From contig NC_068991.1 of the NCBI RefSeq assembly GCF_001194135.2, positions 40,499,878-40,563,877 of the forward strand: 64,000 nt of DNA, given 5' to 3'. Shown here piece by piece: positions 12,637 through 45,697 of this stretch (its first letter is position 1; every line of letters starts with the position of its first letter). The notes under the pieces are model-generated. The model worked only from the letters and a program-made list of their open reading frames with translations, was not told the DNA's origin and ran no database searches. The translations under genes were made by a program, and so were the position numbers. Origin of the DNA: Octopus bimaculoides. Taxonomy: Eukaryota.

Positions 12637-12692
<56 letters not shown>

Positions 12693-23030: not shown

Positions 23031-23216
23031 ATTATCACCACTATTCCTACACACAAACTTCCTCATCTTTGTACATGGGGAACATCATCTGATGCACAAT
23101 TGGACATGGATGCCATAGATGGAGCGAAATTAGATGCATCGCCGGAGTCAGATGACCATGTTGGTCGGCGAGGTCAAATACTTTGGGTACGTGGCCTCAC
23201 AAGACTCCAACAACAG
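23031..23216 (+). CDS. ATP2B: PMCA exon J (IITTIPTHKLP...DHVGRRGQILWVRGLTRLQQQ; first half of CaM-binding domain)
   Basis: TTTTAG acceptor, GTAAAG donor; 186 nt; ends in phase 0 at the position equivalent to vertebrate splice site C. Not in the supplied ORF track. Confidence 0.95.
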
Positions 23217-25539: not shown

Positions 25540-26620
<1,081 letters not shown>

Positions 26621-27006
26621 GATGAATAATTTCAATATATACTCCCCTACTCATACACTTCAAATGTTAAACAGTTGATAAATATCTCTCCTGAACACTG
26701 ACCTGTGTTAGGTTTTATTCATAGAAGGGTTTTATCTCCACAATGAAAGCTTACAAAACACCTGTCAATTACAGATTGTTTTGGTAATTTTAATGACAAA
26801 GAATAATTTTTTCCATGTCCTTTTTGGTGCTAATCAAATCATTTGAGTACTTCTGTGGCTGCTAAAGAAGAAACATAAGAGTGGAACATACTTCTTTTGT
26901 TTTCCAACACTAAATTCAATGAAAATAGTTACATTTCATGAGGTCATCCTACAATGCTCATATATGAGTTGACATCTTTTATCTAATACATTATCATCAA
27001 TGAGTA

Positions 27007-27190
27007 AGGTTGTGAGCTGGCAGAATCGTTAGCTTGCTGGGTGAAATGCTTAGCAATATTTTATCCATCTTCACATTCTGAGTTCAAATTCCGCCATGGC
27101 TGACTTTGCCTTTCATCCTTTCAGGGTCGATAAAATAAGTACCAGTTGAATGCTGGGATCGATGTAATTGACTAGTCCCCTCCCACAAAA
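27007..27190 (+). mobile_element. SINE family B, near full length
   Basis: gagctggcagaatcgttag head, ctgagttcaaattcc B-box-like motif, ggtcgataaaataagtaccagttg core. Confidence 0.8.
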
Positions 27191-28297
27191 AACTGTAAAA
27201 ATGTTGGAGCAGATGCCCTGAAGTATTTGTTCTAACTCATTGCATTCTGAGTTCAAATCCAGCCATGATCTACCTTTGTGGTAGGTTTAACCCATCATCC
27301 AATTTAACATCTCCACCTGGTAGTATGTGTGCTTTTAGTGGAATCTAATTTGTTGCAAGCATTCAGGCCAGGTTTCCAATTTAACAACACCTTGCTCCTT
27401 CTCATCTGTCTCAGAAGTCATGTAAAGGGTTATGGGCACCACCTTCCCTCTCATTGAAAAATCAGAAAGAAAAACAGTATTTTCTCATTAAGGTAGTCAC
27501 TAAACCATCCCAGAATTGTAATTTAGAAGTTGAAGGGTCATACAGATATAGTTTATTCACTTACGTTTCATGAGACATCCACAACCCTGATGTAGACATG
27601 TTTTGATTTGAACAACCTGTTGCAGATAAATAGAAGACATTTAAATGATATTCTGGACTAACTTTTTTTTTCTTATTTGAGTGGAAAACCTTTTCCAGTA
27701 CAGCTAAAGGAAGACAATGTTTCATACAACTAAAAGGGGCTTCCTGTGGCTGCCTCATCTCTCAAACTATATTTGTCAACCCTTAAACATCTGAAACCAA
27801 CTTGAACATTTTCTGATATGCTGAATATCTTGGCCACAAACATCTTTGGCAGCACAATTTTCTCTTGCTTGAATCCATAAAACATATGCTCCTTATGTTT
27901 TTTTTAATTTTCTGGTGCTGCCATGTTAAGAAGTGGATTATACAATGCAAACCAAGTACCTCGGCTACAGGCAATATTTATGAATGCCATAAGATATTTC
28001 CTCTCACATTTACATCTTGAGAGTATTTAAGATTAAACAGAAGCATATATATTTTTTACCTGTCTTCAAATCTTTATTTATAGGATGACTTAACAAATAT
28101 TTGAGATTTCAGCATTAATTTTATATTTTGAATATTTATGTTTTCTTTGTTCTTTCATCTTCTTTAGATATATTTAAATTTTACCATCTTATAAAAGATC
28201 TTTATTTACAGTCTTGCAAAGATGGCAAAATTTAGATGTACCAAAATTAATATGGTATTTGATATATATATACATATGTGTGTGTGTGTGTATGTAT

Positions 28298-28818
28298 NNN
28301 NNNNNNNNNNNNNNNNNNNNNNNNNNNNNNNNNNNNNNNNNNNNNNNNNNNNNNNNNNNNNNNNNNNNNNNNNNNNNNNNNNNNNNNNNNNNNNNNNNNN
28401 NNNNNNNNNNNNNNNNNNNNNNNNNNNNNNNNNNNNNNNNNNNNNNNNNNNNNNNNNNNNNNNNNNNNNNNNNNNNNNNNNNNNNNNNNNNNNNNNNNNN
28501 NNNNNNNNNNNNNNNNNNNNNNNNNNNNNNNNNNNNNNNNNNNNNNNNNNNNNNNNNNNNNNNNNNNNNNNNNNNNNNNNNNNNNNNNNNNNNNNNNNNN
28601 NNNNNNNNNNNNNNNNNNNNNNNNNNNNNNNNNNNNNNNNNNNNNNNNNNNNNNNNNNNNNNNNNNNNNNNNNNNNNNNNNNNNNNNNNNNNNNNNNNNN
28701 NNNNNNNNNNNNNNNNNNNNNNNNNNNNNNNNNNNNNNNNNNNNNNNNNNNNNNNNNNNNNNNNNNNNNNNNNNNNNNNNNNNNNNNNNNNNNNNNNNNN
28801 NNNNNNNNNNNNNNNNNN
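28298..28818. other. Assembly gap; others at 16155..16254, 31736..31858, 47285..47316, 49907..50680, 58360..59116
   Basis: N runs, each next to a (TA)n or (TG)n array. Confidence 0.98.
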
Positions 28819-28875
<57 letters not shown>

Positions 28876-30462
28876 GTATGTATGTATGTATGTGTGTATG
28901 CATATATAATATATATATATATATTTATATATTAGAAATTATAATAGCAGTTTCTTGCCCTCAACACTAACTTATGTATTTATCATGAAACTATCAACAC
29001 GGTTGTTTTTCTTTGTTTGTCTTTTTGTTTGTTTTTCTTTCTTTGTCATAGATAAAGCATGTTTTTTTTTTTTGTAGTCATTTTCCAACAAATGAATTGC
29101 TTTTAGTTAATTTGTCCTATTTTTAATTAGTGGGAGCTGGCCCACCGAAAAGGTTTTAGAGCTGTTGTTTTATGATACTAACCATCATTTTACCGTAAGA
29201 GTTGCTGCATTTTGAAACTAATAATTTAAACTGTAATTCACTTACTCTTACTTCGTCCCTTTTATCTTTAAAAGTTTTTCTTTTTATCCTTTTTGGTTTT
29301 TTTTTTGAGTCACTGTTCAAACTTATTACCACTTTTTGGGAAGGGAATGTTCTCTTGAGAACCTTAACTTTTTACTTATTTAGATCTTCATTTTAACCAT
29401 GAGTTGTGGTTTCCTGTCATGAATCAGATATAGCCCACATAAAAAATTTTTTATAATCTTCATTAAACATTAAAAACTTGATAAGAAATAATCAATAAAA
29501 GTGGTGGGGGCATCAAACTAACCTGTTATTTAACCATATTTTCCTTCAAACACGCATAATTTCAAAAGTATTGGTATATATATATCTTAAGAATTAGTAT
29601 TTCTGGGAGTATCACTATATTTGTAAAAGGTAGATTTTATATGCCAAATATAAACTTGCAATGTTAGCCTTTCACCCTACCTGTGAATATAGTTCACTAT
29701 TGTTTACATGATATGTTTTGATTAATCATATTAACATATTGAATAATCACATTAACATATTGAAATCACTTTTACCATTACCCATAACTAATATTTTACT
29801 GAAGAAAAAATGTCATAATATTTCAAATCTTTCATTTACACTGTTTTTCATAAACTAATTAGTAGGATGGAACAAAATTAACTCTGATATACCTTGAATC
29901 ATCTTGAAAATACACTATTTCAAAATATCAATTAACAAGAGTCTTTTTTTAAAAATCACTAAAGAGGAAAAGATTTTTTTTTTTAATAAATTGAATGAAT
30001 TTATGAATGTGTGAATGAGTGAAATATTTTTCTAATCAAAGTAAAATTTATTGCAGTTAAAATTTGCAGAGCAAAACTTTTTTTGTTTTGTTTCATTTTA
30101 TTTTACCTGTAATATGATTAAGTTGCTTCTATCATTTATCATAAACTTGGCATTCTTTTACTGCCTGTAATTGATGAGACCTTTTTAGCAATGCTCCATT
30201 TATACTGGTATTTCCAGTTCTTCTGTTTTTCACTAAAAGAAAAATTATTCTTTAAGGAGATATGTTTTCTTCCTCTGTTTTTTTATCCTTTTTTCCTTTA
30301 ATTTCAATTCTCTTCAGCTTCAACAAGAAATTGGCTTTCAGACTTACCATTCTTTCCTGTTCAATGTTTTAGTAAGAAGTATTTCAAATTTCAGTTCCTC
30401 TTTTGTTTTCAGTGAAGGTATATCTATTATATCACAAATAATTATTCAATTAGTGTTTTATA

Positions 30463-30653
30463 CACACACACACACACACATTCACACAGTCATACACTAC
30501 ACATACTCACACTTATATATGTGTGTTTGTGTGTATACATATTCATATATATATATATATGTGTGTGTGCGCGCATGTGTGTATATATATTTATATATAT
30601 ATACATACATACATACATATATATATGTACCATCTGCAGATATATATGTATGT

Positions 30654-30700
<47 letters not shown>
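30463..30700. repeat. Compound (CA)/(TA)/(TG) microsatellite; similar arrays near 45130-45435, 47220-47920, 52520-52680, 58080-58360
   Basis: Direct reading; these arrays produce the YIYI/THTH ORFs. Confidence 0.95.
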
Positions 30701-33576
30701 GGATTCATTCAATTTTTACTCATTTTGCAAGTCATTAAATTCCGGCTATAATTTACTGAAATGTGTAAAAACTTACTAAGTTATCTTAGTTTTCATTGAA
30801 TGTATTATTTATTGCAAATATATTTCAATTTCTCTTTTACATGTTTTCACAAGATGTTCTTATTTATTCTGGTAATACCAATACAAGGCCATCAGTTCAT
30901 TCAGTTATTTTTAATCTGTTATCTTTACCCCACCCTCTCTCTCTCTCTCTCTCACCTGATTATTTCTCTCTCCCTCTCTCTTTTTCTCTTCTCCTCTTCT
31001 ATATCTCTCCCTTCCTCTTTTTTAATCATTTACAATTTCTGGAACCAAGATATATTATTCAGACCAAGTGTGTTTGATACAGTTCTTAGGTACTGGGTTT
31101 TGTAGAGAGAAATCCTAAAATTTCATGTTTGTTCATTCTTTTTTCTATGTGGTTACATTTCGCTACATCTCTCCCAATATATTTTCATACTTTTTTGGCT
31201 CCTTGTTTGCCATTTATCATTTGATTTTTTTCATACTGGAAATTATTGGTAATGTTGCATGACTTAACATTTTATCTTTTGAATGCTTCCTATTTTATTG
31301 CCAAAATTTGTTGCCCAAATCTATTCTCTGGTCCTTTTTAAAATTTACTCTGACAATATACTTTCACTTAGGGAACTGTTCCTTTGAACTCTCAACTGAA
31401 AATACTGTCTTATGAATTTGAAAGTCTATTGGCTGATTCCAACCATTTTTTTTTTCTTTTTACCCACACAAAGGACATGGTCAATATGTATGAATTTAAA
31501 TTTGCTTCATAAACATATATTCACATGTTTACGTATGTTGTGTAAAGAAAAGTTTTGTTGGAAAAAAAAAAAAGGCAGAATTTAGGTACACTATAAATTT
31601 ATAGTTTAGATCTTTATAATCAGTTGTTTTCCTCATCTGCTTATACAATGCCACAATTTCTTGGCATGATTTCAATAATTAAAAAGGGTACATGTATCAT
31701 GTATGTGTGTGTGTGTGTGTGTGTGTGTATGTATANNNNNNNNNNNNNNNNNNNNNNNNNNNNNNNNNNNNNNNNNNNNNNNNNNNNNNNNNNNNNNNNN
31801 NNNNNNNNNNNNNNNNNNNNNNNNNNNNNNNNNNNNNNNNNNNNNNNNNNNNNNNNNNTGATCAACAATATATTATAAAAGGAAACATTCTTTTCAATTG
31901 TTTTTCCTTAGACCTCTTACAATGCTGCAATTGTCCCGAAATGTACCTGAAGAAAAGATTAGAGGTGTTGGGAAGAGGGACGTAAATTTAGTTCTAGTTG
32001 AAAATATTGTGTTGTTATGATTTAGTTAATAATTCTTCAAGAACTAATTCTTTAAACTGTTGCAGCATCTTTGCAAAATTCAAAACAGGAAATGATTATT
32101 TATTTATATGCATCTTGAACTTCGTTGAACCTAGTCCCAACACCTAGAATTATTCATTCTACTTATGGTTGCAGTGGTGGTGAGCAAATCAAAAGTAGAT
32201 TTTCATAGCTCCCTTATCTTTCTGTTAAACCAATAGTTATTGTGCCAGTTTTATCTTGCTCCTTTCCACTATGTGTAAGTAGGAAAACCTAATAATGTTA
32301 CAAAAGGTTTATTTGTTGTTTTTTTTCAAATCCTATAGCTTAGCCAGCTATGTAATTCTTGTCAAAAGATTCTAGTCGAAGTTTTATACAAAGGCAAGAG
32401 AAAAAATAACTAACATAAAAGTTAGAAAGCTGGTAACTCAACATACACTCCTAAGCAAGAAAAAACAAAACAGTGAACCATTTTAGAAAATATTTTTAAG
32501 TAAAAGCTTTCTCTGCAAATTGTATTTTCTAATTAATGATACTCCTTCAAAATAATATTCCATATTTGAAGGTGTGTGTGTGTTGGTAGGTAAAATAAGT
32601 TTGTGAGTGAATTATTTGAATATAATAATATCTGATGTGAGGTTGATTTACTGTTACCAATCAGTGAAGGGAGGATACAGCTGTTTTTTATAAGCTGTTT
32701 AATTCGAGAGATAATGAAGAACCTTAATTCTTGCAGTTTAAAGTGTACAGTGCAGTTAGGCTCAGTTAAAATGTACTATCAAGATTGAAAGCAAATTAAT
32801 GGAAAATAATTGTGTATTTCTTTGAAGTTGGATCCATATGATCAATAATATGAGTCAGATTGTGAAAGAGTCAAATATTTCTTAGTTACATTGATATACG
32901 TTAAATTTTAGGTTAGATTACACAACTTTGATATGTAATTTATATTCCAGAAAGTATGCAACTTAAAACTTGTTTTTTAGTTTCAAAACTGAAGAATACA
33001 ATTTAAATTAACTTGAAATTCTTAAAAAAAAATCTAAATATCACGTAGTGTTATCTTAAAAACTACATCCCTAATGAAGAATTTTAAATAAAATTTAAGT
33101 TCCATAAACACTAAGATAGTTCCAGTTATTTGTTGCTAAATTTTCTTTAAATTTGGCCCATGCAAAATAAAATAAATTACTAAATATATATATATATATA
33201 TTCAACTTTTAATAATATCAAATGTAAAAATTTGATATTTTCCCAACTGGTTCATTTTGGCTTTGAATCTTTTCTTCACTGGGAGTGTATGCCTTCCTTT
33301 TTACTTAAAATAATATTTAACATCTAACTGGCATCCCATTTCTTTCTTTTTTTTATTATTGATTCTAATTTTAACTGAACATTTTGACTCCTTTTGACTT
33401 AGTTCTATAATCAGCAAATTTTTCTAGTTTCTGCTATTTTGTGGATCTGCAGCTTAAGTCGCTAGTGGTTCTTATCCAGTTGAAATAGCTTGTCTTGATT
33501 TTATACTTGTTGAAATCACCTCCAGATTAGATGAAACTTTAATGAAAACTTGGTGGTTGTTTCTTTTTTTTTTTCT

Positions 33577-33610
<34 letters not shown>

Positions 33611-34430
33611 TTTTCATTGGCACAATTTAGGTGGAATTTGCAGTCCACACTACCGTAGGTAATTAAATTATTTAAGAAAATAGATCTTGTATGTGAAGAC
33701 ACTTTTAAGTATAGTCAGAATAGTTACAACTTTTGTTTGATAGAAGGAAGCTAAAATTCCTACAGAATATATTAACTTTGTCTCAGAGGAAAAAATATTT
33801 GGTAGAGCTATTGTAAAATTAAAATTTTCCTGTCAGTATGCAATTATAAGATATGAAATTTATTAAACCTCACTTAAAATTTCAGTAATCTGGGAGAAAC
33901 AATATGTTTACTACTCAAAATAAGTTTAGAATAAGCCACATATTTTAAAATAAGGAATTGAATACCATGGTATTGAAATATTAAAATTAAATTTAGATGC
34001 GTTTTGTTTCTTCAATTTACTTGAGCAATTTTTGTGAGTATTACATGTAATTATATTGAATAATAATAATATAAAATACTTTTTAAATATTTTCAAGTTT
34101 AAATGAAGCATTTAAGCAAAAGTATTGATATTGTTAGTTACTAAACATAGATGAATCTTTAGTATTTGGAAGTAGTTTTTATTTGTTCCTTTGATAATAT
34201 TTAAAAAAAAAAACTCATTTTTATTTCTAGTTATCGTTCTTTAATGCTGACCAACTATAATATTCCAATTTATTAATGGCTGATTTGAAATGCCATCTGG
34301 AAAAAGTTAAGGTCCATCAAAAAATGGATAACTTTGAACAGTCCTCAGTTGTTAAGTTTTTTACTGCTACTACTACTGCTGTCATTGAGATGTTAACCTA
34401 AATAGCTGACTAATTTTCTTCTGTTGACAG

Positions 34431-34826
34431 CTTCGGGTAGTGCGAGCGTTTAAGAGTACTTTGGAAGACCTTGAGGAAAAACGTAGCATTCACAGTTTCC
34501 ACAGTTTACACAGCATACGTAGTTCGCGTAGCCACCCTGGGCCCCGGCCCATAAGTGAAGAGGCTTATCACCATGACCACCATTTACGATCAAGTCCACC
34601 AGAAAACCTGTATCTTAACACCCCAGAAATTGTCTCCACTCCAATAACTCCACTTGATCATCAGCCATTCAAGACAAAAAGCCAGTCATTTGAAAATGTT
34701 CCTCTGGTTGCTAAGCAACCTTCACCCATACTGGCTCCTGTTAACCAAACCCGCAAAAAGTCTCCAACAAAGACCTTCAGTCAGTCTGACATTGCCAACA
34801 CAAATATCCATGAGACTTCAATTTAG
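34431..34826 (+). CDS. ATP2B: PMCA alternative terminal exon T1 (LRVVRAFKSTLEDLEEKRSIHS...NTNIHETSI*), 131 aa
   Basis: TTTTCTTCTGTTGACAG acceptor; frame 0 completes the CaM-binding helix; class I PDZ-type end ETSI. Confidence 0.9.
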   Translation, partial: LRVVRAFKSTLEDLEEKRSIHSFHSLHSIRSSRSHPGPRPISEEAYHHDHHLRSSPPENLYLNTPEIVSTPITPLDHQPFKTKSQSFENVPLVAKQPSPILAPVNQTRKKSPTKTFSQSDIANTNIHETSI

Positions 34827-35067
34827 TAGTTTTTCATTTGTTAACAAAAGAAAAAAGTGGAAAATCTTTTCTGTGTGAATTTTTTTTTCCCCCCTTAATG
34901 GATCCAGTTAGCAGACCATAACTGATGATGGTGTTAATAATGAAGGAAAGACTCTGATAATGAGCATCTCTTTGAGGTGATAGAACGATCTGGTCGCTCC
35001 ATATTGCCACTGATCCAATCACCTCCCACATATTCCAAATGCTACCAAGTGAAACTTGTTATAAAAA

Positions 35068-35077
35068 AATAAATAAA
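35068..35077 (+). promoter_or_regulatory. Candidate polyadenylation signal for T1 (two overlapping AATAAA)
   Basis: AATAAATAAA about 240 nt after the T1 stop, with a U/GU-rich element at 35124-35137. AATAAA is common in AT-rich DNA. Confidence 0.4.
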
Positions 35078-35919
35078 AACTGTTGAAGGGACCACAGAAA
35101 CCAAAGGTCAAACTGGATTTGACTTTTTTGGGGTGTCATCATTTTGATCAAAGGATAATAGATTATTCACACAAGCTTCTGGTGCAGTGCACCTTTTTAT
35201 ATTTTCTTTCATAAGTTCCTCTTTTTTTCTTTATCTTTTTTATTATTTTGTTCAATTCAATTTTAAATGTATCTTTTTTTTTTTATTATTCTTATTATTA
35301 CTCACAATTTTTCCCCATCAGTGGATGGACTCCTGTGAATAGTGTCTAACTTTTAGTCTGATATATAACAGTAGAATAACTTATTACTAAACACTTCACT
35401 CACCTCTAACATAAACCTACCACTTCACTGCTCTTAATGAAACATTTATCAGCTGTGTTGTGATAATCCCATGTGAAGGCGATGTGTTTTTGTCAACAAT
35501 TTTCTTTCCATGATCCTCTGGTACTCTTCCCTGCATGGTATTTATGTTCATGTTTAACCCAAGATTTTATCCTTTTTTTTTTACCCAGATGATGTTGCTA
35601 TTATATGTATTTTGTTTTTTACTTTTTATTTAATTCACATTTTCCTTGCTCTTGCCTTTTTTCCTTTCCAGTTTGGAGACCTAAAATTACCATTGCTTAG
35701 AATTCAAATTTGCAAATGTGTGTCATATTAGTTCACATAGTCTTGTTTTTAGTACTGCACTAGTTTATTAGTCCAAATTTTGTTGTTGCGAAACCTTATC
35801 CTTTTGTTTTAATTATTAGAGAATGCTGCAATGTTGTTTTCCCTTGTGCTTGTATATGTTTGAACACCCTACCCTTGTTTTGTTTTGGTTTTGTTTTTGG
35901 TTTCTTTCCTGTTTTTCAG

Positions 35920-36096
35920 ATTCGTGTTGTTAATGCTTTCCGCATGGCATTAGATGCGCGTTACGATGGACATAGCCTGTCCTCGAACTATAGTTCCCAA
36001 TCACTTGAAAACCTTAGGATGAGGTACAAATTTCCAGCCAGCCCACGCATCGACGCGTCTGCTAGCACCAACCAGACCGTAGACACATCAGTTTGA
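35920..36096 (+). CDS. ATP2B: PMCA alternative terminal exon T2 (IRVVNAFRMALDARYDG...TNQTVDTSV*), 58 aa
   Basis: Long U-rich tract plus CAG; IRVVNAFR matches the PMCA b-type tail start; ends DTSV. Confidence 0.9.
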   Translation: MRVVNAFRMALDARYDGHSLSSNYSSQSLENLRMRYKFPASPRIDASASTNQTVDTSV

Positions 36097-39000
36097 GCAT
36101 GTACTGCACTATTTTGGACTATGCCCTGCATCATATTATGTGGTAGTATACAAATGGGCACTGCAAGAGCTGCTGTTGGAAATATTGTGTGACTTACTTA
36201 CTGTCACAAATCCCTTTTTCATTTTGTATCATTTGCTATTCATCTTATATTGTTTTGATATCCTTATTCATTTAGAACTTGGGTTCTGAGCTTGCTTTAT
36301 ATTGCTGAAACTGTGCAGTGTAGAAGTACCTTTCCCCTAACATTACTGATCTGGTGCCAGTTCCTGCTGTGAAAACTAATCTTACTATAGATATGAAAAA
36401 AATATTTACTGAGTGCAGTATATCTTTGAAACCTACATCCCCACAAAGATAATTTAGTTGATATTGATATCAAGCCAATATGCATATCTAGTAGGATAAA
36501 AAAAAAACATTATTTACATATATACCCCAAAATTTTCAGATTTCTTCCAATCAGTTGGGCTGAGGCACGTACATTTTCAATATTAGTTTACTCCTTTTTA
36601 TAATCAAAACCCTTCCCTTTAAGTTTTAAAATGTTTTAAATTATGAATTTTAAGATTTAAAAAAAAAATAAACCAAAACCTTGTTCTTATTTGACTGTCA
36701 TACTTGAAGCTAGAAGCATGTGTGCAGATGTGTTTACAATTGCTGCCATACTTTTCATTATGTTCGATACAGTATAAAGATTTTCAGTAATTTTTACATC
36801 ATCTTTATACCGTCTACTTTCATTTTATGTATGTGCAGGAACTGTGTGTATGTGTGTGCAATTGCTCATACAAAACACCAACTGCTTTGTTCATTTTATA
36901 TTTTTCTTTAACCGAAGGCTAATTGTCTCAAATGTGTGGTTGAAATTAAAAATTAACCTTTAAAATGTTGAAAAATGGAGAAAAGTTTTTACACAAATTT
37001 TTTCCTCTCTGAGTGGAAAATTTACGAAAAAATAAAATTATGGAAAATAACAAAAAAAAAAATTTTTTTAACTTCGAGTTTTATGTACAAAATGATCTTT
37101 AAAATGAAATAAATGGAACTAGAAATGATTAATTGATTTTAGAAGAAACATTTTTGTAATTATTCAAATGTAAATTTTGAAAATCTCTATTTAAAAAACG
37201 CAAAAAAAAAAAGGTACAGAAACAAAACCATTTTGTAGTGGGATATGTTATGGACACCATCATTGGGTGTTTCAATTATTGGAATGGATTAATCTTACAC
37301 AACTAGTGGGCGTCTTGAAGTATGACTGCAGGTATTGGCTGTGCTGTTAGATACTGAGCAGGTTTCCTGTGTTTCTAGTGTGACGATAAATATTTACTAA
37401 CACCAAACACACAGTTTGATTCACATTTTACAAAATTTCCTTTCAGAAAATTAATAAATGCAAAAAAAAAAAAACTTAAAATGAATTGTATTAATTCCTT
37501 TAAAATAAAATAATAGTTTCATTATCTTAAATCAACAGATAATTATAAAGTAAATAACTTTTTAAAATATTATTAAAAATGACTTTAAAATAGCTTACTC
37601 TGCAAGAACTTTTAATCTTGCAGTTATTAGTTTCCATGTACTGGCAGTTTTTAGAGCATATCAATATTAACTGACTGCTATGATTTTATTGTCACGGGGA
37701 AAAAATTCAAATCTTTGGTATGCTCTCATTCTTATCTCAGATCAGTTCTTTTTTTTTTTATTTTATTATTATTAACAGTAGGATGCCAGCTAGCTCTCTG
37801 GATGTATGTTTACTTGAGCTTACATGTTCTAGCTGCACTTTATCCTATCTCTCTATCACCATACACAAAGTCATTGACTTAAAAACTTCTGTATCAACAA
37901 TGAGGCAAATAATGGCAGAAAAAGGTGAGATGACTAGGTCATCTGCAGTTCTTAAAGATTGATTGGTAATTTAACTGTAGGTTTTGTACCAACAACTGTT
38001 TTGTTCTCAGCATTGTTTATCGTTTTTATGAATAAAAACGTTTGACCTGTAGTATTTTGTTATTGTTTGTAGTTGTTTAAATAACAGCTTTTATTTATTT
38101 TTCATTTTTTCTTTTCTTTTTCTAATCCTGAATTACTAATTACTATTACTTTCATCTTGCATTTATGCAATTTATTAACACCAGTGTTCAGTAATTTACT
38201 CGTAAAATGGTAAATACAAACACCCTGAAATAAAAACCACATTGATGCTAAACTTAGAGACTTAATCTGGCTGCGTATATTTCTGGGAAAAAAAAATTGA
38301 AAGCCCATACAATAACAACAGGGCTTTGTGAAAATTCACTCAGTTGTCTTATTGATTAAACACCATTTTATTTCTCCTCATTCATATTCTCCCAGTTATA
38401 ACACAAGTTGCCAGCTGTAACTGTCCAGATTCATCTTGATAAGAATATGTGGGCAGGTTATAGCCAATATATTTACTGTTGAAATTTACTAAACTGTTCA
38501 ATAAATGTTGTTATGGGAAGTATGCACGTGTTTGTGTACGTATTTGTGTGATTTTATTGAAACAATTTGATTTTCCTTTATTTACTTGAATTCATTATTA
38601 AAATTCCTTTGATTAGATATGGAAACCAGAAACAAATTGTTTGTTTCTGAAAGCCACATTAATAATTAAAATTTTAGTGGGACTGATTTGATATCACTGA
38701 TGTGAAACATTGCTTTGAACTCAGTAATTCTGTAAATAAAGGTTCTACTGAAAGTCTGCAGCAAAACCCTACTGAACAATCAGTGGTTGCCAGTGTGATT
38801 ACTGATATTAACATAGATTTAGACGACACATACACACAGATACACACACATTTTAGTCTAAAGCTTGGTAACCACAGAGAAACTCTTTTATGTGTAGCTG
38901 TTGTTCCCTAAATTAAAAGATAACTTTCTGGTGGAACCACTTTTGAAGTTTTAACTCCCAAAGCACACATATAAAGCTATAAACAAGAACAGGTAAGTAT

Positions 39001-40309
39001 TGAGTTGGAAAACCCTTTTGGAAAGAATAAGTCAAGGGCTACCCTTTGACTTTTTTTTATCCCAAACAATTTTTCAATTCAATATTTACATGCTATTGTT
39101 TATAGCTTTACATGTATGCTTTGAGAGATACTATTCCAAAAAGAACTATTTCATATTCTCTTAAAAGGTCAAAATTAGTTGGGGTAATATTTGCCATTTT
39201 ATAATGAATTATTTCCTTGTTTTCGGCATATTTTCACATACATTATTTCTTAAAAGTTACCAAATTTTAGATACAACTAAACTAATTTAGTTCTAAGTAA
39301 CTTGTAAGCTCTTGGAATTATACTCATGCATATATGTGCACATTCTAAAACTTTACAAAAGGATCTGGAATAAAAATTGAGATATTTTTGTTTATTATTT
39401 TGTGAGAAAATAAATAAATAGCAATGAGGTAGAAAACTACTTAATTTTCTTTTGTTTTGTTTTTTGTGTTTTTTTTTAAATTTCATTAACACTAAGATTA
39501 ATAAGCATTGCACTGTTCCCTGGGTTTTGTATTCAAATTTCTGGGTGGACAGGTTTTGTCTAAAGCTGCTAAATATTTACATTGATACAAATAGTTTTCT
39601 GTTTTTTTAAATCATTTCAAATCTTGAGCCCTAATGACAATCTCCCATTCAAACCCTATTTTCAAAAACTGTTTTTCAAATTTTTAACCATCTTAAGAAT
39701 TAGATTTGGTTTTATTGAATATAACTATTTGTGAAATTATTGCTATTATTTGAAAATATTTATTTTCTCCACAAAATAGTCTTTAGAATTTTACAGAACT
39801 CCTCACTGACAAAATTGTCTCAATAAAATAGCAATTTATTATATCCACCATACTTGGAAGTATATTTTAAAAAAATGTATATTTGAAGATAAAATAACAA
39901 AAAAAAAATCATTGAGAATTGTTCTGTATAAGAGGAAGTGTTAAAAAAAGTGAATTTTATATACACATTACTGCTTCATTTACTTCATGCATCATGGATT
40001 TCATCGAGCTCTGGATATGAACCAGGAATACATTGGAGTTAAAGAAATCTGCCAAAATATCTTACAACATGTTTTTCCCAAGAACTAAGGTGACATTTGC
40101 AACCAGAGAGAATACCGCGGCAAACATTGGAAGCATTGTGGAGCCAGTTCTGTCGTAATGGTGAAACTTTCCTTGTCCAAACAACATGACTCTACTTACC
40201 CACCTACTTACCTATGTAGCATGATTGTATCCTTCTTCTGCCTTTTTTCTTTTTTTATTTTTTCTTCTCTTTTTTCTAACTTGTCTTTAACCCTCCTCTG
40301 TGCTCTTTG

Positions 40310-40520
40310 ATGAGCAGATTCAACCTCTCTCGCTGCTTTCTTCCATTCAGATCAACATTATTCTATCCAATGTGTCAACAAATGAGCACTTGCAGGCTTA
40401 CATCTGCTGCTTTTCATTGTTGGCAAGAAATTCTCTCAGTCCCAAGCACCAAATTGTTTACTATGCACATCTATCTCATCCTGTCTGCCATTTATCCCAA
40501 CATCCCAAACATCAGTGTTG
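40310..40520 (-). mobile_element. Highly degenerate RTE-like RT 3' end
   Basis: Minus strand MKSSRCKP..THWIE..SEW loosely matches GKRARGRPR.TWID...EW. Confidence 0.3.
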
Positions 40521-40529
40521 TATTTAAAA

Positions 40530-42400
40530 TTGTGTTCAAATTTTCAATATGTATTCATTTCTATTCTCTAAATAATTTTAAAGCTTTATTTTCTTTGTTG
40601 TCAAACTAAAATTCAATAATACAGTTAGGTTAAGAGTTTTAAATATTCGTGCCCTGACTTTTCTGCAAATTCTTCATTTGCAAATGTTTATATTCTCAGA
40701 ATTCTCATTCCTTCTTATAGAAAACTTTGGAACAGTTGCATTTCATGCAAAATAATTGTTTTTAATATTTGCCCCTGCAAGTTCTTTACTCAAAACGAAA
40801 TTTTAAAATCTGATATTTAAATATGTTTTGCGAAAAAGCTATATATATTTCCTACACCCATCTGCTTTTAGTACTCTCTCCAGTTATTGACTCACTTTTA
40901 CTTTTCTTCTTTACAATTCACTCTGCTTTGTCTGTTAAAAATCAAATTCTTATTTTCTCTTACTTTCTTATTTTCTATTCTACCAAGGAAAGATATTAGA
41001 TTTTTATGGTAATAATGTAAAATTATATTTATTAAACCAATAATTGTTTCTCTTTTTAATTAGAAAATAAAATTGATACTTTTGTTTTGAACAGCTTTAG
41101 GGATTATAATGTCTTATATGATTAATATCAATTTGAAGAACCCAAATTATTGATTCCTTGGTGAAATCAATACATTCCCAATCTTTATTCAAATTTTAAA
41201 TTATTCCAAAAAACTGTTCTCAGTTCTCATCACAAATATATTGACATTTTGGATTTCTAATTTAGATGAATTCATGTGTGGTTTTATCAATAACCATTTC
41301 TCTTTTATCATTTTAGGTTTCTAAATTGGTCTTCATTATCTGCAAATGTAACAAAAAATATTTTAATCTTCTTGCTTTGAACTGTCTTCATAGATGCTAA
41401 CTACAATTTAAAATTTTTATCTGCTAGTTCTAGCTTTTGCATATCTTTTTTCACATCAGACAACTTCATCACAATAGGTTAGATGATGGCACTTAATCAA
41501 GCTTCCTTCAGCTTCTTGATACTGATCTTCAATATCAGTTATCATTTCCTTATACACAAACATATGCACACACATACACACATATATTTGCAGTGATACA
41601 AAAAATTCCATATAAAAACAGTTTCCACATTAAGAGCAAAATCTAATCAACTTAATAAACAATATTATGGTATCTAAACTTATTGCATGTTGCTACAGTT
41701 TCTTCGGTGCTGAGACGAAATCTTGATTCTAAACTTAATTTTAAGACTTAAGAATGACTTCCAAAAATTTCTCTCTACTTCAATCTATATCTTTACAATT
41801 AACTTCAGTTTTCATATTTTATTTTTCCAATGCTTGAGACTTCATATTCTATTAAATTAAACATTTCTATCTCATCTTTTGGAATGAAATTTCTTAAAGG
41901 CAAGAAAATCATCTTACCTGCCTGCTATTTATTATTGAACACATTTCACTTACTATATGCTAATCTGATTCCTATGGTTTATCATTTTCATTATAGTTTA
42001 ATGGAAATTCTTTGGGCTTCCTTTTTGCTTCTTTTTTTTTCTTTCTTTTTTTCATTTACAATCTGGGGTTACTTCTACTGTCAAATTATCTTGCTTGAAT
42101 TGTTTAACAATGTCTACCTAAAATTCTTCACTTAAGAGATTTTAATTCTTTCTTGTAATTTATATTTTTCTTTTCACTTTCTCTCTAGCTTCCCATCCAA
42201 TTTCTAATATTGTTGATTTTTGGTGCAAAAATTGTTTACATCTCTAATATAGATTTAGATAACTGTAAGTTTATGAATTTTATTGCAAGATTTATCTTTA
42301 TAATAGATTTTTTCTTGCCAAAATGTAAGATATTTGAAACATTAATTAGATCAAGCAAACATTGTACTGAGCAAAGACTTCTCTCAAAAATGCAAATACA
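40530..42400 (-). mobile_element. Degenerate L1/Tx1-like LINE ORF2 remnant
   Basis: T-rich on the + strand; minus strand IKIFFVTFADN near 41340-41380 (FADD-like); no intact ORF. Confidence 0.35.
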
Positions 42401-43064
42401 TTAGTTATAAATTATAATGTAGAAAATACATCAAGACATTTGACACTAACTTACAAATTTGTAAGTCTTATGATGAAAGTTTGCTTGCTAATGTTGACCT
42501 CTGAACTAAAATGATCAGCAGTGTGCCCGGGAAAAAATATTTATCTTTCAAATGACTAGTCCCAGTCTTTGTAAATAATTTAAGATGAAGTGTGTTACTA
42601 TAAACAACAGAAGCCATTTGTAACGATTGCTTCCTCATCTTGACACTGCATGATTGTTGCAAATGAGTGCCACCATTATACAAATAGTGTCATTTGTTTC
42701 CAATCTTCAATGAGAACCAGTCAAAGAGAAACGAGTGATGGCTGGCAACAGGAAGGGCATCCAGCTGTAGAAAATCTGCCTAAGCCATGCAAGTATGGAA
42801 AAGTGAATGTTAAAATGATGATGATGATCTTCCATTCAGTTGCAAAACTCAGCTCAAGTTATATATTGTCCAGTATTGCTATTTGAAGGTATACCAATAA
42901 TCCTATGAATTATGGTGTATGATTCTATGTACACTCTTGTATAACATAATGTAACAAACTGGTGAAGTGAGATTGAATAAAATATGTGATATGAATTTTA
43001 TTTAAATATCTCTTTGCTTTTATTTTATTATTAAATTTGATACAAAATATAATAGCTTAATTCA

Positions 43065-43323
43065 TTAACCATTTCATTACCATATTTCTATTGAAATACA
43101 CTATCTTTATTTCAATAAATTTTGAAAATAATAAAGAATTTAATAAAATAACTTTTTCGTTATTAAGCTGGTGTTTGAAACATAAATTAAAATGAAATTT
43201 TGATGAATTTTAATTTAGATCACTTTACAACTTTAGAACATTTTTAAAAAATTATACAAACAGAAAGTTTATATCATAGAACCAGGGACAGTTTCAGGCA
43301 AGTTGGTATCAAAAAAGGATTGA
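43065..43323. mobile_element. piggyBac-like MITE (same family as 20288..20445)
   Basis: ttaaccatttc ... aaaaaggattgaa degraded termini; shared internal blocks. Confidence 0.6.
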
Positions 43324-43751
43324 AGCAGGTTTATGTATTAGAAATATATTTATAAACACCAGGTATTTTGGCAAGATACAACCAACTAGTTTTTCTCCTT
43401 CACTCTTTATGGGCTTTTGTACAGCCCATCAGTGCCTTGCCAGAGAGTGCATAGCTCTACAAATACACTGCAGCTAAAGTAAATAAATCTTCATGAAATA
43501 TTCTATAACAAAGTAACCAACTTGTACAATACATTAAAGTATATTTACATGAAGTTTTAATGCTTGCTTATGTTGTGGATGAATAAATGGAATCCTAACT
43601 TGAAATGTTCCATCAAATAATGTAAAGTTGCTGTCAACTGATAATCTTGCTACAAGCTTTGCGTTATATATTTCTTTTAATCAAGTCACCAAATATTTAA
43701 TAGCTAAAAATATCCATCAAATTCAGATGTATATTAATCAGAACTGAGGTG

Positions 43752-43753
<2 letters not shown>

Positions 43754-43810
<57 letters not shown>

Positions 43811-43865
43811 TTCTCTCCCTCTCTCTCTCTCTCTCCCTTTCTCTCCCTCTCTCTATCTCTCTATT
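43754..43865. repeat. (CT)n microsatellite
   Basis: Direct reading. Confidence 0.95.
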
Positions 43866-45129
43866 ATCTCTGAAAACTTAGTCTTCCAACAATCTAGATC
43901 ACTAGTCAGAAAAAGTTCTCTAAAATATATCCCTTGTTACTTTTTAAAAACAGGTTTGACAACGTACTATTATTATTACCATAGGGGTAGAGGAGTTGGT
44001 ACAAACAAGAAACATCTAAACTAGGTGTTTTACCATTATTCAGGTGTTTTATTTTTGTTTATTTTTTTTTTAGACTTGTGGGCTTTTTAGTTCATGAGCT
44101 CTATCGAGAGATCAGCTTTACCTTCTTGTTTGACTCCACAATTTGGTAGTAATTATCACATGCTGTATTGAATTCCATTAATTATTGATCTTTCTTTCCA
44201 ATTTGAGACATCATGCCAAAGTAAGAAAATATTATTATTCTTCTGTGGGGGTTGATTCAACAAACTGGTTGCAGTCTACAGCTAAAGCTACTTTTTCATC
44301 ATATGCCACTTGCTGCCTTAGTATATAGACAAATTCCTATTTCTCTCCCTATAAAATCTACAAGTGTTATCTTTTTAAGAAAGAAAACTTATATGAACGT
44401 GAATTCTCAAACTAATTTCAAAGTCAATTCTAGCAACTTTTGTTAGGTTGCTAATCTGAGGATTAAATTGTAATTATAAAATCATTATTATTGTTATTAC
44501 TGAGTACAACGAGAAATGACTTTTCAGGAACTTGATTCCACATAAAAACCACTTCAATTCCACATAAAGTCTACATCAGTTGTAACCTTCAAAACAAGGC
44601 TTCAACACCACACTTTAGCATATCTTCTCTCCTTTTTAATACTAGGATGTCATACCTAACCTTCATCATCATTATCATCATCATCATCATATATTTATAC
44701 CCATTTGTCCAAGGTTACTTAATGTCCCTTGTGGTTAACCAATACAATAGAAGTAAGCTCCTTGTGAGCCAAGTCTACAACACTGTTTTGATGCCCTATC
44801 AATGCCATTTCACTTTACATTGCCTTTGAAAAAAAAAGGTATTGTATGTCACACAAACTCATTTCCCCTCTTCCATAAATGTAGGGCCTTGTGCCAACAT
44901 AAACCACCAATTATTGTGATAACTTAGGATCTACAAAGTGTGATGAGCAATTCTCCTTCAGCAGTGCTGGCGTCAAAGACTTTTTTGAGCCAGAAATATC
45001 AGTTCATTGCATGGGCCAGCTTCTTCATTGCCTAGCATTTGCACGTTGCATGCATGTATATTCTTTATATTGTTTTGTTGTTTTTTTTCTTTTCTGATTA
45101 TCACAATAATTTTACTTTATCGCTTGTTA

Positions 45130-45206
<77 letters not shown>

Positions 45207-45364
45207 GTGTGTGTGTATATATATGTATGTGTGTGTGTTTATATGTTATTTTATTTAAGACAAAAAATATATAAAGCAATTTTATCAGTATTACTGTCAG
45301 TTTTATCCTTTATTTTGTTTTTTAATTCTTTTTATTTGACTTTTTTTTTCCTTTCTTGGCAAGT

Positions 45365-45429
<65 letters not shown>

Positions 45430-45481
45430 TATATAAAATTTCCTGTTATTATTTTTATTGTTATTATTCTTTTGTTTTCAG

Positions 45482-45697
45482 ATTCGTGTTGTAAACGCTT
45501 TTCAAATGGATTTAGATTCTCACTTGGACAGCTATGACAAACGCAGTCGGCCCTCTGTTGCCAGCTTGCCATCTCTTCAATTACGCTCTGGACCATTAAA
45601 AAAAAATAATCTTCCAAGTTCTCCTGAAACGGATGAATGTCCAAGTAAACCATGGCTAAACCGTGCCGAAAGTATCCCATATGCTGACGAACCTTAA
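45482..45697 (+). CDS. ATP2B: PMCA alternative terminal exon T3 (IRVVNAFQMDLDSHLDS...RAESIPYADEP*), 71 aa
   Basis: TTTTGTTTTCAG acceptor; IRVVNAF start with 29/36 nt identity to T2 over the first 12 codons; no PDZ-type end. Confidence 0.87.
   Translation: MRVVNAFQMDLDSHLDSYDKRSRPSVASLPSLQLRSGPLKKNNLPSSPETDECPSKPWLNRAESIPYADEP

What the first reader, a model, noticed from the sequence alone, without database searches (positions are those of the whole stretch)
29132..45024. Candidate 16-kb long-range RNA duplex (docking site/selector) that would loop out T1 and T2 to select T3
Seen: GGGAGCUGGCCCA (29132-29144) pairs with UGGGCCAGCUUCU (45012-45024), 13 bp with 10 consecutive Watson-Crick and 2 G-U pairs. 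Colinear and antiparallel, AGAGUUGCU (29198-29206) pairs with AGCAAUUCU (44946-44954), extendable across a bulge to 29211/44942, and GCUGUUG (29161-67) pairs with CAGCAGU (44959-65). The spacers fold locally: AUGAU/AUCAU at 29172-29188 and an 11-bp stem at 44967-44993. Both partners are GC-rich islands in AT-rich, TE-poor intron; one lies upstream of all terminal exons and the other about 460 nt before T3. Known: competing docking/selector pairings control exon clusters such as Dscam1 and 14-3-3zeta in arthropods. Inference: the same logic may choose PMCA last exons, which I do not know to have been described. Found by eye, so chance is not excluded.
Basis: partly seen in the sequence, partly recalled or inferred. 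Interest (0 to 1): 0.85.

Follow-up and report, generated by a model that had tools for sequence, protein, structure and literature searches.

The report
Conserved splicing island, unproven 16-kb duplex
The two complementary stretches are really there, but only the one next to the last alternative exon of this octopus calcium-pump gene is conserved, and it looks like a cluster of binding sites for the splicing factor Rbfox; the 16-kb RNA loop remains a statistically intriguing but untested possibility.

Summary
The letters are correct. GGGAGCUGGCCCA (29132-29144) pairs with UGGGCCAGCUUCU (45012-45024): 13 bp, -24.9 kcal/mol. It is the strongest non-microsatellite helix between the two introns. 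As a pair found by search it is not significant: 9% of shuffled intron pairs do as well. The colinear extensions are chance (P = 0.16), and 3 of 34,368 real window pairs match the extended duplex.

Arm B lies in a 45-nt island (45008-45052) that is conserved, about 500 nt before T3, in a second octopod whose introns otherwise barely align. The island carries three UGCAUG (Rbfox-type) motifs. A UGCAUG cluster precedes T3 in three further molluscs within 600 nt or less, and lies 1.1-1.5 kb upstream in Elysia.

With B held fixed, intron X contains two unusually strong partners: A, and a new site A' at 33153-33165 (P about 0.001-0.007 each). A' is absent in two other octopods. A's orthologue could not be reached. 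In the second octopod, B's best partners lie elsewhere. No selector precedes T1 or T2, so the Dscam-type docking/selector logic is not met.

Best reading: a conserved Rbfox-type intronic element, with a possible, unproven, lineage-specific loop-out helix.

The parts
23031..23216 (+). Exon encoding the first half of the calmodulin-binding domain (...GQILWVRGLTRLQQQ). Its donor GT is at 23217. This is the common 5' splice site for T1, T2 and T3. The start given is that of the open frame, not a mapped acceptor.
   Evidence: Homologues of this frame carry PF12424, and one is named Ca2+ transporting ATPase.
28298..28818 (.). Assembly gap (521 N), 314 nt upstream of arm A. Together with the gap at 31736-31858 it isolates the 2.9-kb block that carries arm A.
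28819..28908 (+). (UA)n/(UG)n microsatellite. It is nominally complementary to the microsatellites at 45125-45238 and 45363-45423 (-60 to -80 kcal/mol).
29132..29144 (+). Arm A, GGGAGCUGGCCCA. It can also close a local hairpin, GUGGG/CCCAC (29130-29145).
31736..31858 (.). Assembly gap (123 N) in the intron, inside the proposed loop, next to a (TG)n run.
33153..33165 (+). A', UUGGCCCAUGCAA. This is a second strong partner of the B island. It pairs with 45007-45019 (-23.1; 12 Watson-Crick pairs plus 1 G-U) and covers the first UGCAUG. It excludes A-B pairing.
34431..34826 (+). Terminal exon T1 coding part (LRVVRAFKS...ETSI*), with a PDZ-ligand-type end.
35920..36096 (+). Terminal exon T2 coding part (IRVVNAFRMALD...DTSV*).
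36356..36369 (+). GCCAGUUCCUGCUG in the conserved T2 3'UTR. It is the second-best partner of arm A (29128-29141, -22.5). Three of its 14 nt differ in species Y.
45008..45056 (+). B island. Positions 45008-45052 are conserved with species Y. UGCAUG motifs start at 45008, 45047 and 45051, and the conserved core is UGCAUGGGCCAGCUU (45008-45022).
45125..45423 (+). (UG)n/(UA)n microsatellites between the B island and T3.
45482..45697 (+). Terminal exon T3 coding part (IRVVNAFQMDLD...SIPYADEP*). It is conserved across molluscs.

Best explanation
The functional object is the 3' partner. It is a roughly 45-nt intronic island, 430-475 nt upstream of terminal exon T3, that carries a cluster of UGCAUG motifs. 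These are most likely bound by an Rbfox-family protein to set the use of T3 against T1 and T2.

T3 (VVNAFQ...RSRPSVAS) appears to be the mollusc counterpart of the vertebrate PMCA site-C 'a' exon. In mouse, inclusion of that exon depends on Rbfox2.

The 13-bp complementarity to 29132-29144 is real, and it is the best available in these introns. However, it has not been shown to be selected. It is either fortuitous or a lineage-specific helper helix. It is not a Dscam-type docking/selector system.

Shown here: the pairing potential, conservation of the island, and recurrence of the motif cluster in five molluscs. Inferred: Rbfox binding, and the direction of its effect on T3.
For: - The B island is the only alignable piece in the 600 nt before T3 between the window and species Y (ENA ERZ21867824 ctg120657l). 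There is a 15/15 identity, UGCAUGGGCCAGCUU, plus GCAUUUGCA.G.UGCAUG, at a similar distance from T3 in both species.
- UGCAUG counts within 600 nt upstream of T3, against the rest of each locus: window 3 (Poisson P 0.0014), Y 3 (1.5e-4), L004 4 (4e-4), Tegillarca granosa 3 (3.5e-3). Elysia crispata has five GCAUG at -1.1 to -1.5 kb. All are on the sense strand.
- The T3 peptide is conserved across molluscs.
- The T1-T2-T3 order is conserved in Y and in L004.
- A review lists mouse Rbfox2 as promoting inclusion of Atp2b1 exon 21 (PMC11380049).
- Against a selected duplex: the flanks are not significant; the pair-level P is 0.09; A' is absent in Y and V; B's best partners in Y sit inside the T2-T3 intron.
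Against: - Nine conserved bases (GGCCAGCUU) next to the first UGCAUG are not explained by an Rbfox motif.
- With the island held fixed, intron X holds two partners far stronger than expected. P(best <= -24.9) is 0.003 with dinucleotide shuffles and 0.0007-0.0013 with local block shuffles. P(second <= -22.1) is 0 of 1500.
- A and A' are the two best partners of B on the sense strand of the whole 64-kb window. 192 kb of decoy sequence gives nothing below -19.1.
- Genome-wide word counts predict only 0.0024 copies of the 10-mer and 0.0007 copies of the 12-mer per intron of this size.
- No binding or expression data were available. Rbfox sites upstream of an exon usually repress it, so the direction of the effect is unknown.
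Confidence: 0.55

Rival explanations
1. A real long-range RNA structure. The B island pairs with A (16-kb loop) or with A' (12-kb loop) in the intron upstream of T1. This loops out T1 and T2 and brings the common 5' splice site closer to T3. It could also gate access to the first UGCAUG, which A' covers entirely. This would be an exon loop-out or Rbfox-bridge hybrid, not a multi-selector docking system.
For: - The core helix is rank 1 between the two introns.
- With B fixed, P is about 0.001-0.003 for A and 0.003-0.0075 for A'.
- A and A' are the two best partners in the whole window.
- Genome word frequencies agree with these probabilities.
- The bases conserved in Y (45008-22) are almost exactly the union of the two pairing footprints, 45007-19 and 45012-24.
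- The arms are single copy, so they are not inverted transposon copies.
- The energy exceeds the -19.8 kcal/mol core of the validated ENAH bridge (PMC8052449).
- In Y, B again has two fairly strong partners (P second = 0.013).
Against: - B came to attention because of the helix, so the fixed-B P values are partly post hoc. The unconditioned P is 0.09.
- The flanks are not significant.
- A' and any TGGCCCA are absent from 5.86 kb (Y) and 3.4 kb (V) upstream of T1.
- The best partner of B there is only -12.8, and Y's best partners lie inside the T2-T3 intron, so they would not loop out T1/T2.
- Neither arm is within 50 nt of an exon.
- Published false-discovery rates are 10% to over 50% even when both arms are conserved, and they rise with spread.
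- A local hairpin within the island competes with the long-range pairing, and the self-complementary microsatellites nearby are far stronger.
Confidence: 0.25
2. Pure coincidence on both counts. The helix is a by-eye pick among about 10^8 possible pairs, and the B island is conserved for a reason unrelated to T3 splicing, for example a DNA-level enhancer or an element of another transcript.
For: - Pair-level P is 0.09, and the flanks give P = 0.16.
- About 12% of the T2-T3 interval aligns to Y, so an arm falling in a conserved block is not rare.
- A transcript in a related species starts inside this intron and ends in T3 (L005).
Against: - Sense-strand UGCAUG clusters recur before T3 in five molluscs with otherwise unrelated flanks.
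- There is a second partner, A'.
Confidence: 0.12
3. Assembly artefact. The 2.9-kb block carrying A (28819-31735), bounded by gaps on both sides, is misplaced or inverted. If inverted, A would be a direct repeat of B (TGGGCCAGCTCCC against TGGGCCAGCTTCT) and no duplex would exist.
For: - There are gaps on both sides of the block.
- The block has no homology to Y or V that could anchor it.
Against: - The AT and GC skews of the block have the same sign as the rest of the sense strand.
- The estimated gap sizes suggest paired-read scaffolding, which normally fixes orientation (inference).
Confidence: 0.05

Closest known systems
Rbfox-regulated alternative exons with conserved intronic (U)GCAUG clusters, in particular vertebrate PMCA1 (Atp2b1) site-C exon 21
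   Same: Both involve the same gene family and the same splice region, directly after the first half of the calmodulin-binding domain. T3 begins VVNAFQ and has an RxxPS(V/I)AS motif, like the vertebrate 'a' insert (recalled from memory, not tested). Clustered sense-strand UGCAUG motifs near the regulated exon are conserved across species. Rbfox2 dependence is reported in mouse (PMC11380049).
   Different: Here the regulated unit is a third, distal alternative terminal exon, not a cassette placed before the 'b' exon. The cluster lies upstream of the exon, at 70-530 nt, or 1.1-1.5 kb in Elysia. Binding and direction of effect are untested in any mollusc.
Rbfox 'RNA bridges' (Lovci et al. 2013; catalogued in PMC8052449)
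   Same: A long-range helix has UGCAUG motifs within 0-35 nt of one arm. Its helix energy is comparable to the ENAH bridge core (-19.8 kcal/mol).
   Different: In a bridge, the mate arm sits next to the regulated exon and both arms are conserved. Here A is 5.9 kb from the upstream exon and 5.3 kb from T1. Conservation of A is unknown, and A' is not conserved.
Competing docking-site/selector structures (Dscam1 exon 6, 14-3-3zeta and similar)
   Same: An upstream intronic site pairs with a site just upstream of one of several alternative exons, and the intervening exons lie in the loop.
   Different: There is only one 'selector'. Nothing complementary to A precedes T1 or T2. Instead it is B that has two mutually exclusive partners, both upstream of T1, which does not encode a choice among exons. 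The exons are terminal and carry their own poly(A) sites, not internal mutually exclusive exons. No conservation or covariation was found.
Exon loop-out by intronic complementarity (Solnick-type; PCCR loop-outs in PMC8052449)
   Same: The geometry matches: T1 and T2 lie inside a loop closed by A-B or A'-B.
   Different: The spread is very large, 12-16 kb. There is a single short helix and no evidence of conservation.

Membership tests
Dscam-type docking site / selector system | One selector, complementary to the same docking site, next to each alternative exon | tested here: not met
   The partners of arm A across the window are 45012 (-24.9), 36356 in the T2 3'UTR (-22.5) and 26548 (-20.4). 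Nothing at or below -14.4 lies in the 1 kb before T1 or in the T1-T2 intron.
Dscam-type docking site / selector system | Docking site conserved across related species | tested here: inconclusive
   No match to 29100-29230, and no GCTGGCCCA, in 49 kb of species Y. However, only 5.86 kb upstream of Y's T1 is on the contig. The exon-based search for the neighbouring contig failed.
Dscam-type docking site / selector system | Compensatory substitutions that keep the pairing | tested here: inconclusive
   The B core is identical in Y. The last two pairs of the helix change on the B side (CU to UG), and the A side is unknown.
Rbfox RNA bridge | (U)GCAUG within about 50 nt of one arm | tested here: met
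   UGCAUG motifs start at 45008, 45047 and 45051, and arm B is 45012-45024.
Rbfox RNA bridge | Mate arm within about 50 nt of the regulated exon | tested here: not met
   A is 5.9 kb from the donor at 23217 and 5.3 kb from T1. A' is 1.27 kb from T1.
Rbfox RNA bridge | Both arms conserved | tested here: not met
   B is conserved. A' is absent in Y and V. A could not be tested.
Rbfox-regulated exon with intronic UGCAUG cluster | Significant local clustering of UGCAUG near the alternative exon | tested here: met
   There are 3 motifs within 50 nt, against 0.21 expected per 600 nt (P = 0.0014).
Rbfox-regulated exon with intronic UGCAUG cluster | Cluster conserved in orthologous introns | tested here: met
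   The cluster is found in Y, L004 and Tegillarca within 600 nt, and in Elysia at 1.1-1.5 kb.
Rbfox-regulated exon with intronic UGCAUG cluster | An Rbfox protein is encoded by the organism | tested here: inconclusive
Other RRMs score 30-41%. The full gene was not reconstructed.
Rbfox-regulated exon with intronic UGCAUG cluster | Binding to the site, and a splicing change when the factor or motif is removed | not testable with these tools
   This needs CLIP, knock-down or a minigene.

The most novel reading that the evidence does not exclude
The conserved B island is a dual-purpose switch. Its UGCAUGGGCCAGCUU core either binds Rbfox or pairs with one of two sites (A or A') deep in the upstream intron. 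Pairing closes a 12-16-kb loop around terminal exons T1 and T2. RNA structure and Rbfox would then jointly decide which C-terminal tail the octopus calcium pump receives. This would be the first long-range structure controlling alternative last exons in a mollusc, with partner sites that turn over between species while the island stays fixed.
Probability: 0.2. Interest if true: 0.7.

Novelty: new member of a known kind. Interest (0 to 1): 0.4.

Why it matters
PMCA C-terminal variants differ in calmodulin regulation and in PDZ anchoring: T1 and T2 end in ETSI and DTSV, and T3 does not. The choice of last exon therefore shapes calcium clearance in neurons and muscle.

A UGCAUG cluster before the 'a'-like exon in cephalopods, gastropods and a bivalve, together with Rbfox2 dependence of the mouse Atp2b1 site-C exon, points to a splicing switch inherited from the bilaterian ancestor. 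Cephalopod nervous systems would be a natural place to test this.

If the long-range pairing is real as well, it would extend loop-out or bridge mechanisms to alternative terminal exons and to molluscs. It would also give a case in which one arm is fixed while its partners turn over.

Tried and rejected
1. Inverted transposon or repeat copies as the source of complementarity: rejected. Each arm region occurs once in the 2.34-Gb genome. The 14-mer TGCATGGGCCAGCT occurs 3 times, against 1 for the control. The A' region has only one other 80%-identical copy.

2. Known RNA families: there are no Rfam matches in the window.

4. Microsatellite duplexes (-60 to -80 kcal/mol): set aside. They are self-complementary low-complexity tracts that are common throughout this window.

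5. Reaching arm A's orthologue. I walked the species-Y contig to its first base; it ends 5.86 kb upstream of T1. A search with the preceding exon found no Y contig. A metagenome scan for the B pattern found nothing. Contigs of a third octopod (V) reach only 3.4 kb upstream of T1.

6. The idea that Y's best partner (12647-12659, UGGAGUUGGCCCA) is a displaced orthologue of A: there is no flank homology.

7. A conserved local hairpin as the reason for B's conservation: it is possible in both species, but there is no covariation with only two sequences.

8. One script call was wasted, and one shuffle run timed out.


Full report
WHAT IS IN THE WINDOW

The + strand carries the 3' half of a plasma-membrane Ca2+-ATPase (PMCA) gene. 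Stop-to-stop frames show the P-type ATPase exons. One exon ends ...GQILWVRGLTRLQQQ, the first half of the calmodulin-binding domain, with its donor GT at 23217. Homologues of that frame carry PF12424, and one is named Ca2+ transporting ATPase.

Three alternative terminal exons follow. Each begins (L/I)RVV(R/N)AF directly after an AG:
- T1 from 34431, ending ...ETSI*.
- T2 from 35920, ending ...DTSV*.
- T3 from 45482, ending ...SIPYADEP*.

The window is G000:C11:40499878-40563877, in a 2.34-Gb assembly of 145,327 contigs.

THE GAPS

The flagged gap (31736-31858) lies in the intron between arm A and T1, next to a (TG)n run. It touches no exon and neither arm, so no reading frame is at stake. It only makes the 16-kb loop length nominal.

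More relevant is a second gap (28298-28818), 314 nt upstream of arm A. Arm A therefore sits on a 2.9-kb block bounded by gaps on both sides. If that block were inverted, A would be a direct repeat of B rather than its complement. I could not test this. The block has no homology to the other species. The only support for the given orientation is that its AT and GC skews have the same sign as the rest of the sense strand.

Yes, at the level of letters.
- The core helix is 13 bp at -24.9 kcal/mol.
- RNAduplex adds a further 12-bp helix, 29146-29157/44976-44987, giving -50.1 kcal/mol over about 90 nt on each side.

IS IT MORE THAN CHANCE?

This depends on how the question is framed.

(a) As a pair found by searching:
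- After masking simple repeats, the core is the strongest gapless helix between the intron upstream of T1 (X, 23271-34427) and the T2-T3 interval (36100-45480).
- Even so, 9% of dinucleotide-shuffled intron pairs contain one at least as strong.
- The extended duplex has z = -3.3 against shuffles, one of which reached -55.7.
- Three of 34,368 real window pairs from the same introns equal it. The grid pair that contains A-B ranks 15th.
- The flanks without the core are not better than shuffled flanks (P = 0.16). The colinear extensions therefore add nothing.
- Without masking, 304 helices beat the core. The strongest listed are (UA)n/(UG)n microsatellites lying 230-310 nt upstream of A and 100-400 nt downstream of B, up to -80.5 kcal/mol.

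(b) With the 3' arm fixed for an independent reason (see the next section), the picture changes:
- The island 45008-45052 has two partners in X. One is A (-24.9). The next best partner is only -13.7.
- Shuffling X gives P(best <= -24.9) = 0.003 with dinucleotide shuffles, and 0.0007-0.0013 with 20- or 40-nt block shuffles that keep local composition. P(best <= -22.1) is 0.003-0.006. A second partner that strong appeared in none of 1500 shuffles.
- A and A' are the two best partners of the island on the sense strand of the whole 64-kb window. 192 kb of decoys (antisense, reversed, complemented) gave nothing below -19.1.
- Genome-wide word counts agree. AGCTGGCCCA occurs 506 + 514 times, and TGGCCCATGCAA 123 + 154 times, in 2.34 Gb. 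That predicts 0.0024 and 0.0007 copies per intron of this size.

These conditional numbers are partly post hoc, because I looked at B on account of the helix. The A' result is the cleaner test. It is mutually exclusive with A-B, not additive.

NOT REPEAT COPIES, NOT A KNOWN RNA

- Each arm region occurs once in the genome.
- TGCATGGGCCAGCT occurs three times.
- A' has one other 80%-identical copy.
- There is no Rfam match in the window.

COMPARATIVE EVIDENCE

The T3 peptide finds relatives across molluscs.

Species Y. One relative lies on a 278-kb ENA contig from a second octopod, here called species Y. I read that contig piecewise from its first base to 10 kb past T3.
- It carries T1 (96% amino-acid identity), T2 (91%) and T3 (93%) in the same order.
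- Its T2-T3 intron is 31 kb, against 9.4 kb in the window.
- The introns barely align. In the 600 nt before T3, the only alignable piece away from the exon border is the B island: AUGCAUGGGCCAGCUUUGUACUUGCAUUUGCAUGCUGCAUG in Y against UUGCAUGGGCCAGCUUCUUCAUUGCCUAGCAUUUGCACGUUGCAUGCAUG in the window.
- The island lies 490-530 nt from T3 in Y and 430-475 nt in the window.
- The fifteen identical bases, UGCAUGGGCCAGCUU, cover almost exactly the union of the A' and A footprints.

The UGCAUG cluster. The island also holds three UGCAUG motifs in each octopod, and this feature extends much further:
- four UGCAUG at -73 to -131 in L004 (a gastropod-like T3);
- three at -273 to -365 in the bivalve Tegillarca granosa;
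- five GCAUG at -1.1 to -1.5 kb in Elysia crispata;
- all are on the sense strand, and the local excess has P = 1.5e-4 to 3.5e-3 in four species.
- The non-cephalopods lack GGGCCAGCUU.

Supporting context for Rbfox:
- UGCAUG is the Rbfox recognition element (established knowledge).
- The genome has an exon 74% identical to part of the Rbfox RRM.
- A review lists mouse Rbfox2 as promoting inclusion of Atp2b1 exon 21 (PMC11380049). To my knowledge that exon is the PMCA1 site-C 'a' exon.
- T3's VVNAFQ...RSRPSVAS resembles the vertebrate 'a' insert. This is a recollection, not tested here.

THE PARTNER SIDE DOES NOT HOLD UP WHERE IT CAN BE SEEN

- In Y, the 5.86 kb upstream of T1 (to the contig end) has no TGGCCCA and no match to the A or A' regions. 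B's best partner there is -12.8.
- B's best partners in Y are 12647-12659 (-20.2) and 33892-33903 (-19.4). Both lie inside the T2-T3 intron, so they would not loop out T1 and T2. P(best) is 0.12-0.13 and P(second) is 0.013.
- A third octopod, V (Logan contigs L011-L020; T1 92% nucleotide identity), has no TGGCCCA in the 3.4 kb upstream of T1. Its intron aligns to Y but not to the window beyond 34301.
- A' is therefore not conserved.
- A's orthologue, 5.3 kb upstream of T1 in the window, lies beyond both contigs. My attempt to find the neighbouring Y contig through the preceding exon failed, and a metagenome scan found nothing.

ARCHITECTURE AGAINST THE KNOWN MODELS

A Dscam-type system needs a selector beside each alternative exon, all competing for one docking site. 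A's other partners are at 36356-36369 and at 26548. The first lies in the conserved T2 3'UTR, scores -22.5, and has three of its 14 bases different in Y. Nothing at or below -14.4 lies before T1 or T2.

An Rbfox RNA bridge needs the mate arm next to the regulated exon, and both arms conserved (PMC8052449). A and A' are 1.3-5.9 kb from any exon.

The geometry does fit an exon loop-out, and the energy exceeds the -19.8 kcal/mol core of the validated ENAH bridge. However, published false-discovery rates for such predictions run from 10% to over 50% even with both arms conserved, and they rise with spread.

A local hairpin between the first and last UGCAUG of the island is possible in both octopods, with no covariation. 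Arm A can close its own GUGGG/CCCAC hairpin.

CONCLUSION

This appears to be an old feature of mollusc PMCA genes, with a plausible vertebrate counterpart.

The 16-kb helix to A is the best pairing available. Together with A', it gives the island more complementarity to the upstream intron than chance predicts. That is why I keep a real loop-out or bridge at about one chance in four. There is no conservation on the partner side, no significant extension of the helix, and no selector set, so the docking/selector interpretation is not supported as written.

Noticed in passing
window 39970-40031; L005 91-158; species Y record about 23341-23404: A 60-nt block deep in the T2-T3 intron is conserved (82-83%) in two other octopods. 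In a transcript contig of a related species (Logan SRR8281676) it forms part of a 5' exon spliced directly onto T3. The resulting open frame reads into T3 without any PMCA body. It may be an internal promoter or an alternative upstream exon for T3.
   Followed up: partly
window 36100-38080: Five blocks aligning to species Y (70-85%) fill the 2 kb after the T2 stop codon. The best-conserved block (37929-38077) contains an AATAAA at 38031. This looks like a roughly 2-kb T2 3'UTR ending near 38.05 kb.
   Followed up: partly
window 34431-34826, 35920-36096, 45482-45697; L004; species Y: The order T1 (ETSI end), T2 (DTSV end), T3 (YADEP end) is conserved between octopods and a gastropod-like locus (L004). 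The T3 peptide IRVVNAFQMDLD...DSYDKRSRPS...SIPYADE recurs almost unchanged in dozens of database ORFs, including ones named from gastropods and a bivalve.
   Followed up: partly
species Y record 8026-38854, against window 36096-45482: The T2-T3 interval is 31 kb in species Y against 9.4 kb here, yet the B island keeps nearly the same distance to T3 in both.
   Followed up: no
window upstream of 34301; L011 and species Y: The intron just upstream of T1 aligns between the two other octopods in several blocks. Neither aligns to the window beyond 34301, which suggests lineage-specific sequence turnover or an insertion in the window's species.
   Followed up: no
whole genome (G000): The 12-mer TGGCCCATGCAA / TTGCATGGGCCA occurs 277 times, against 27 for its reversed control. 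The 10-mer AGCTGGCCCA occurs 1020 times against 265. Both words are over-represented roughly 4- to 10-fold, for unknown reasons.
   Followed up: no
window 28819-28908, 30496-30701, 45125-45238, 45363-45423; L003 9840-10050: Long (TA)n/(TG)n microsatellites flank both arms and also precede T3 in species Y. They are self-complementary and would dominate any naive duplex search in this genome.
   Followed up: partly
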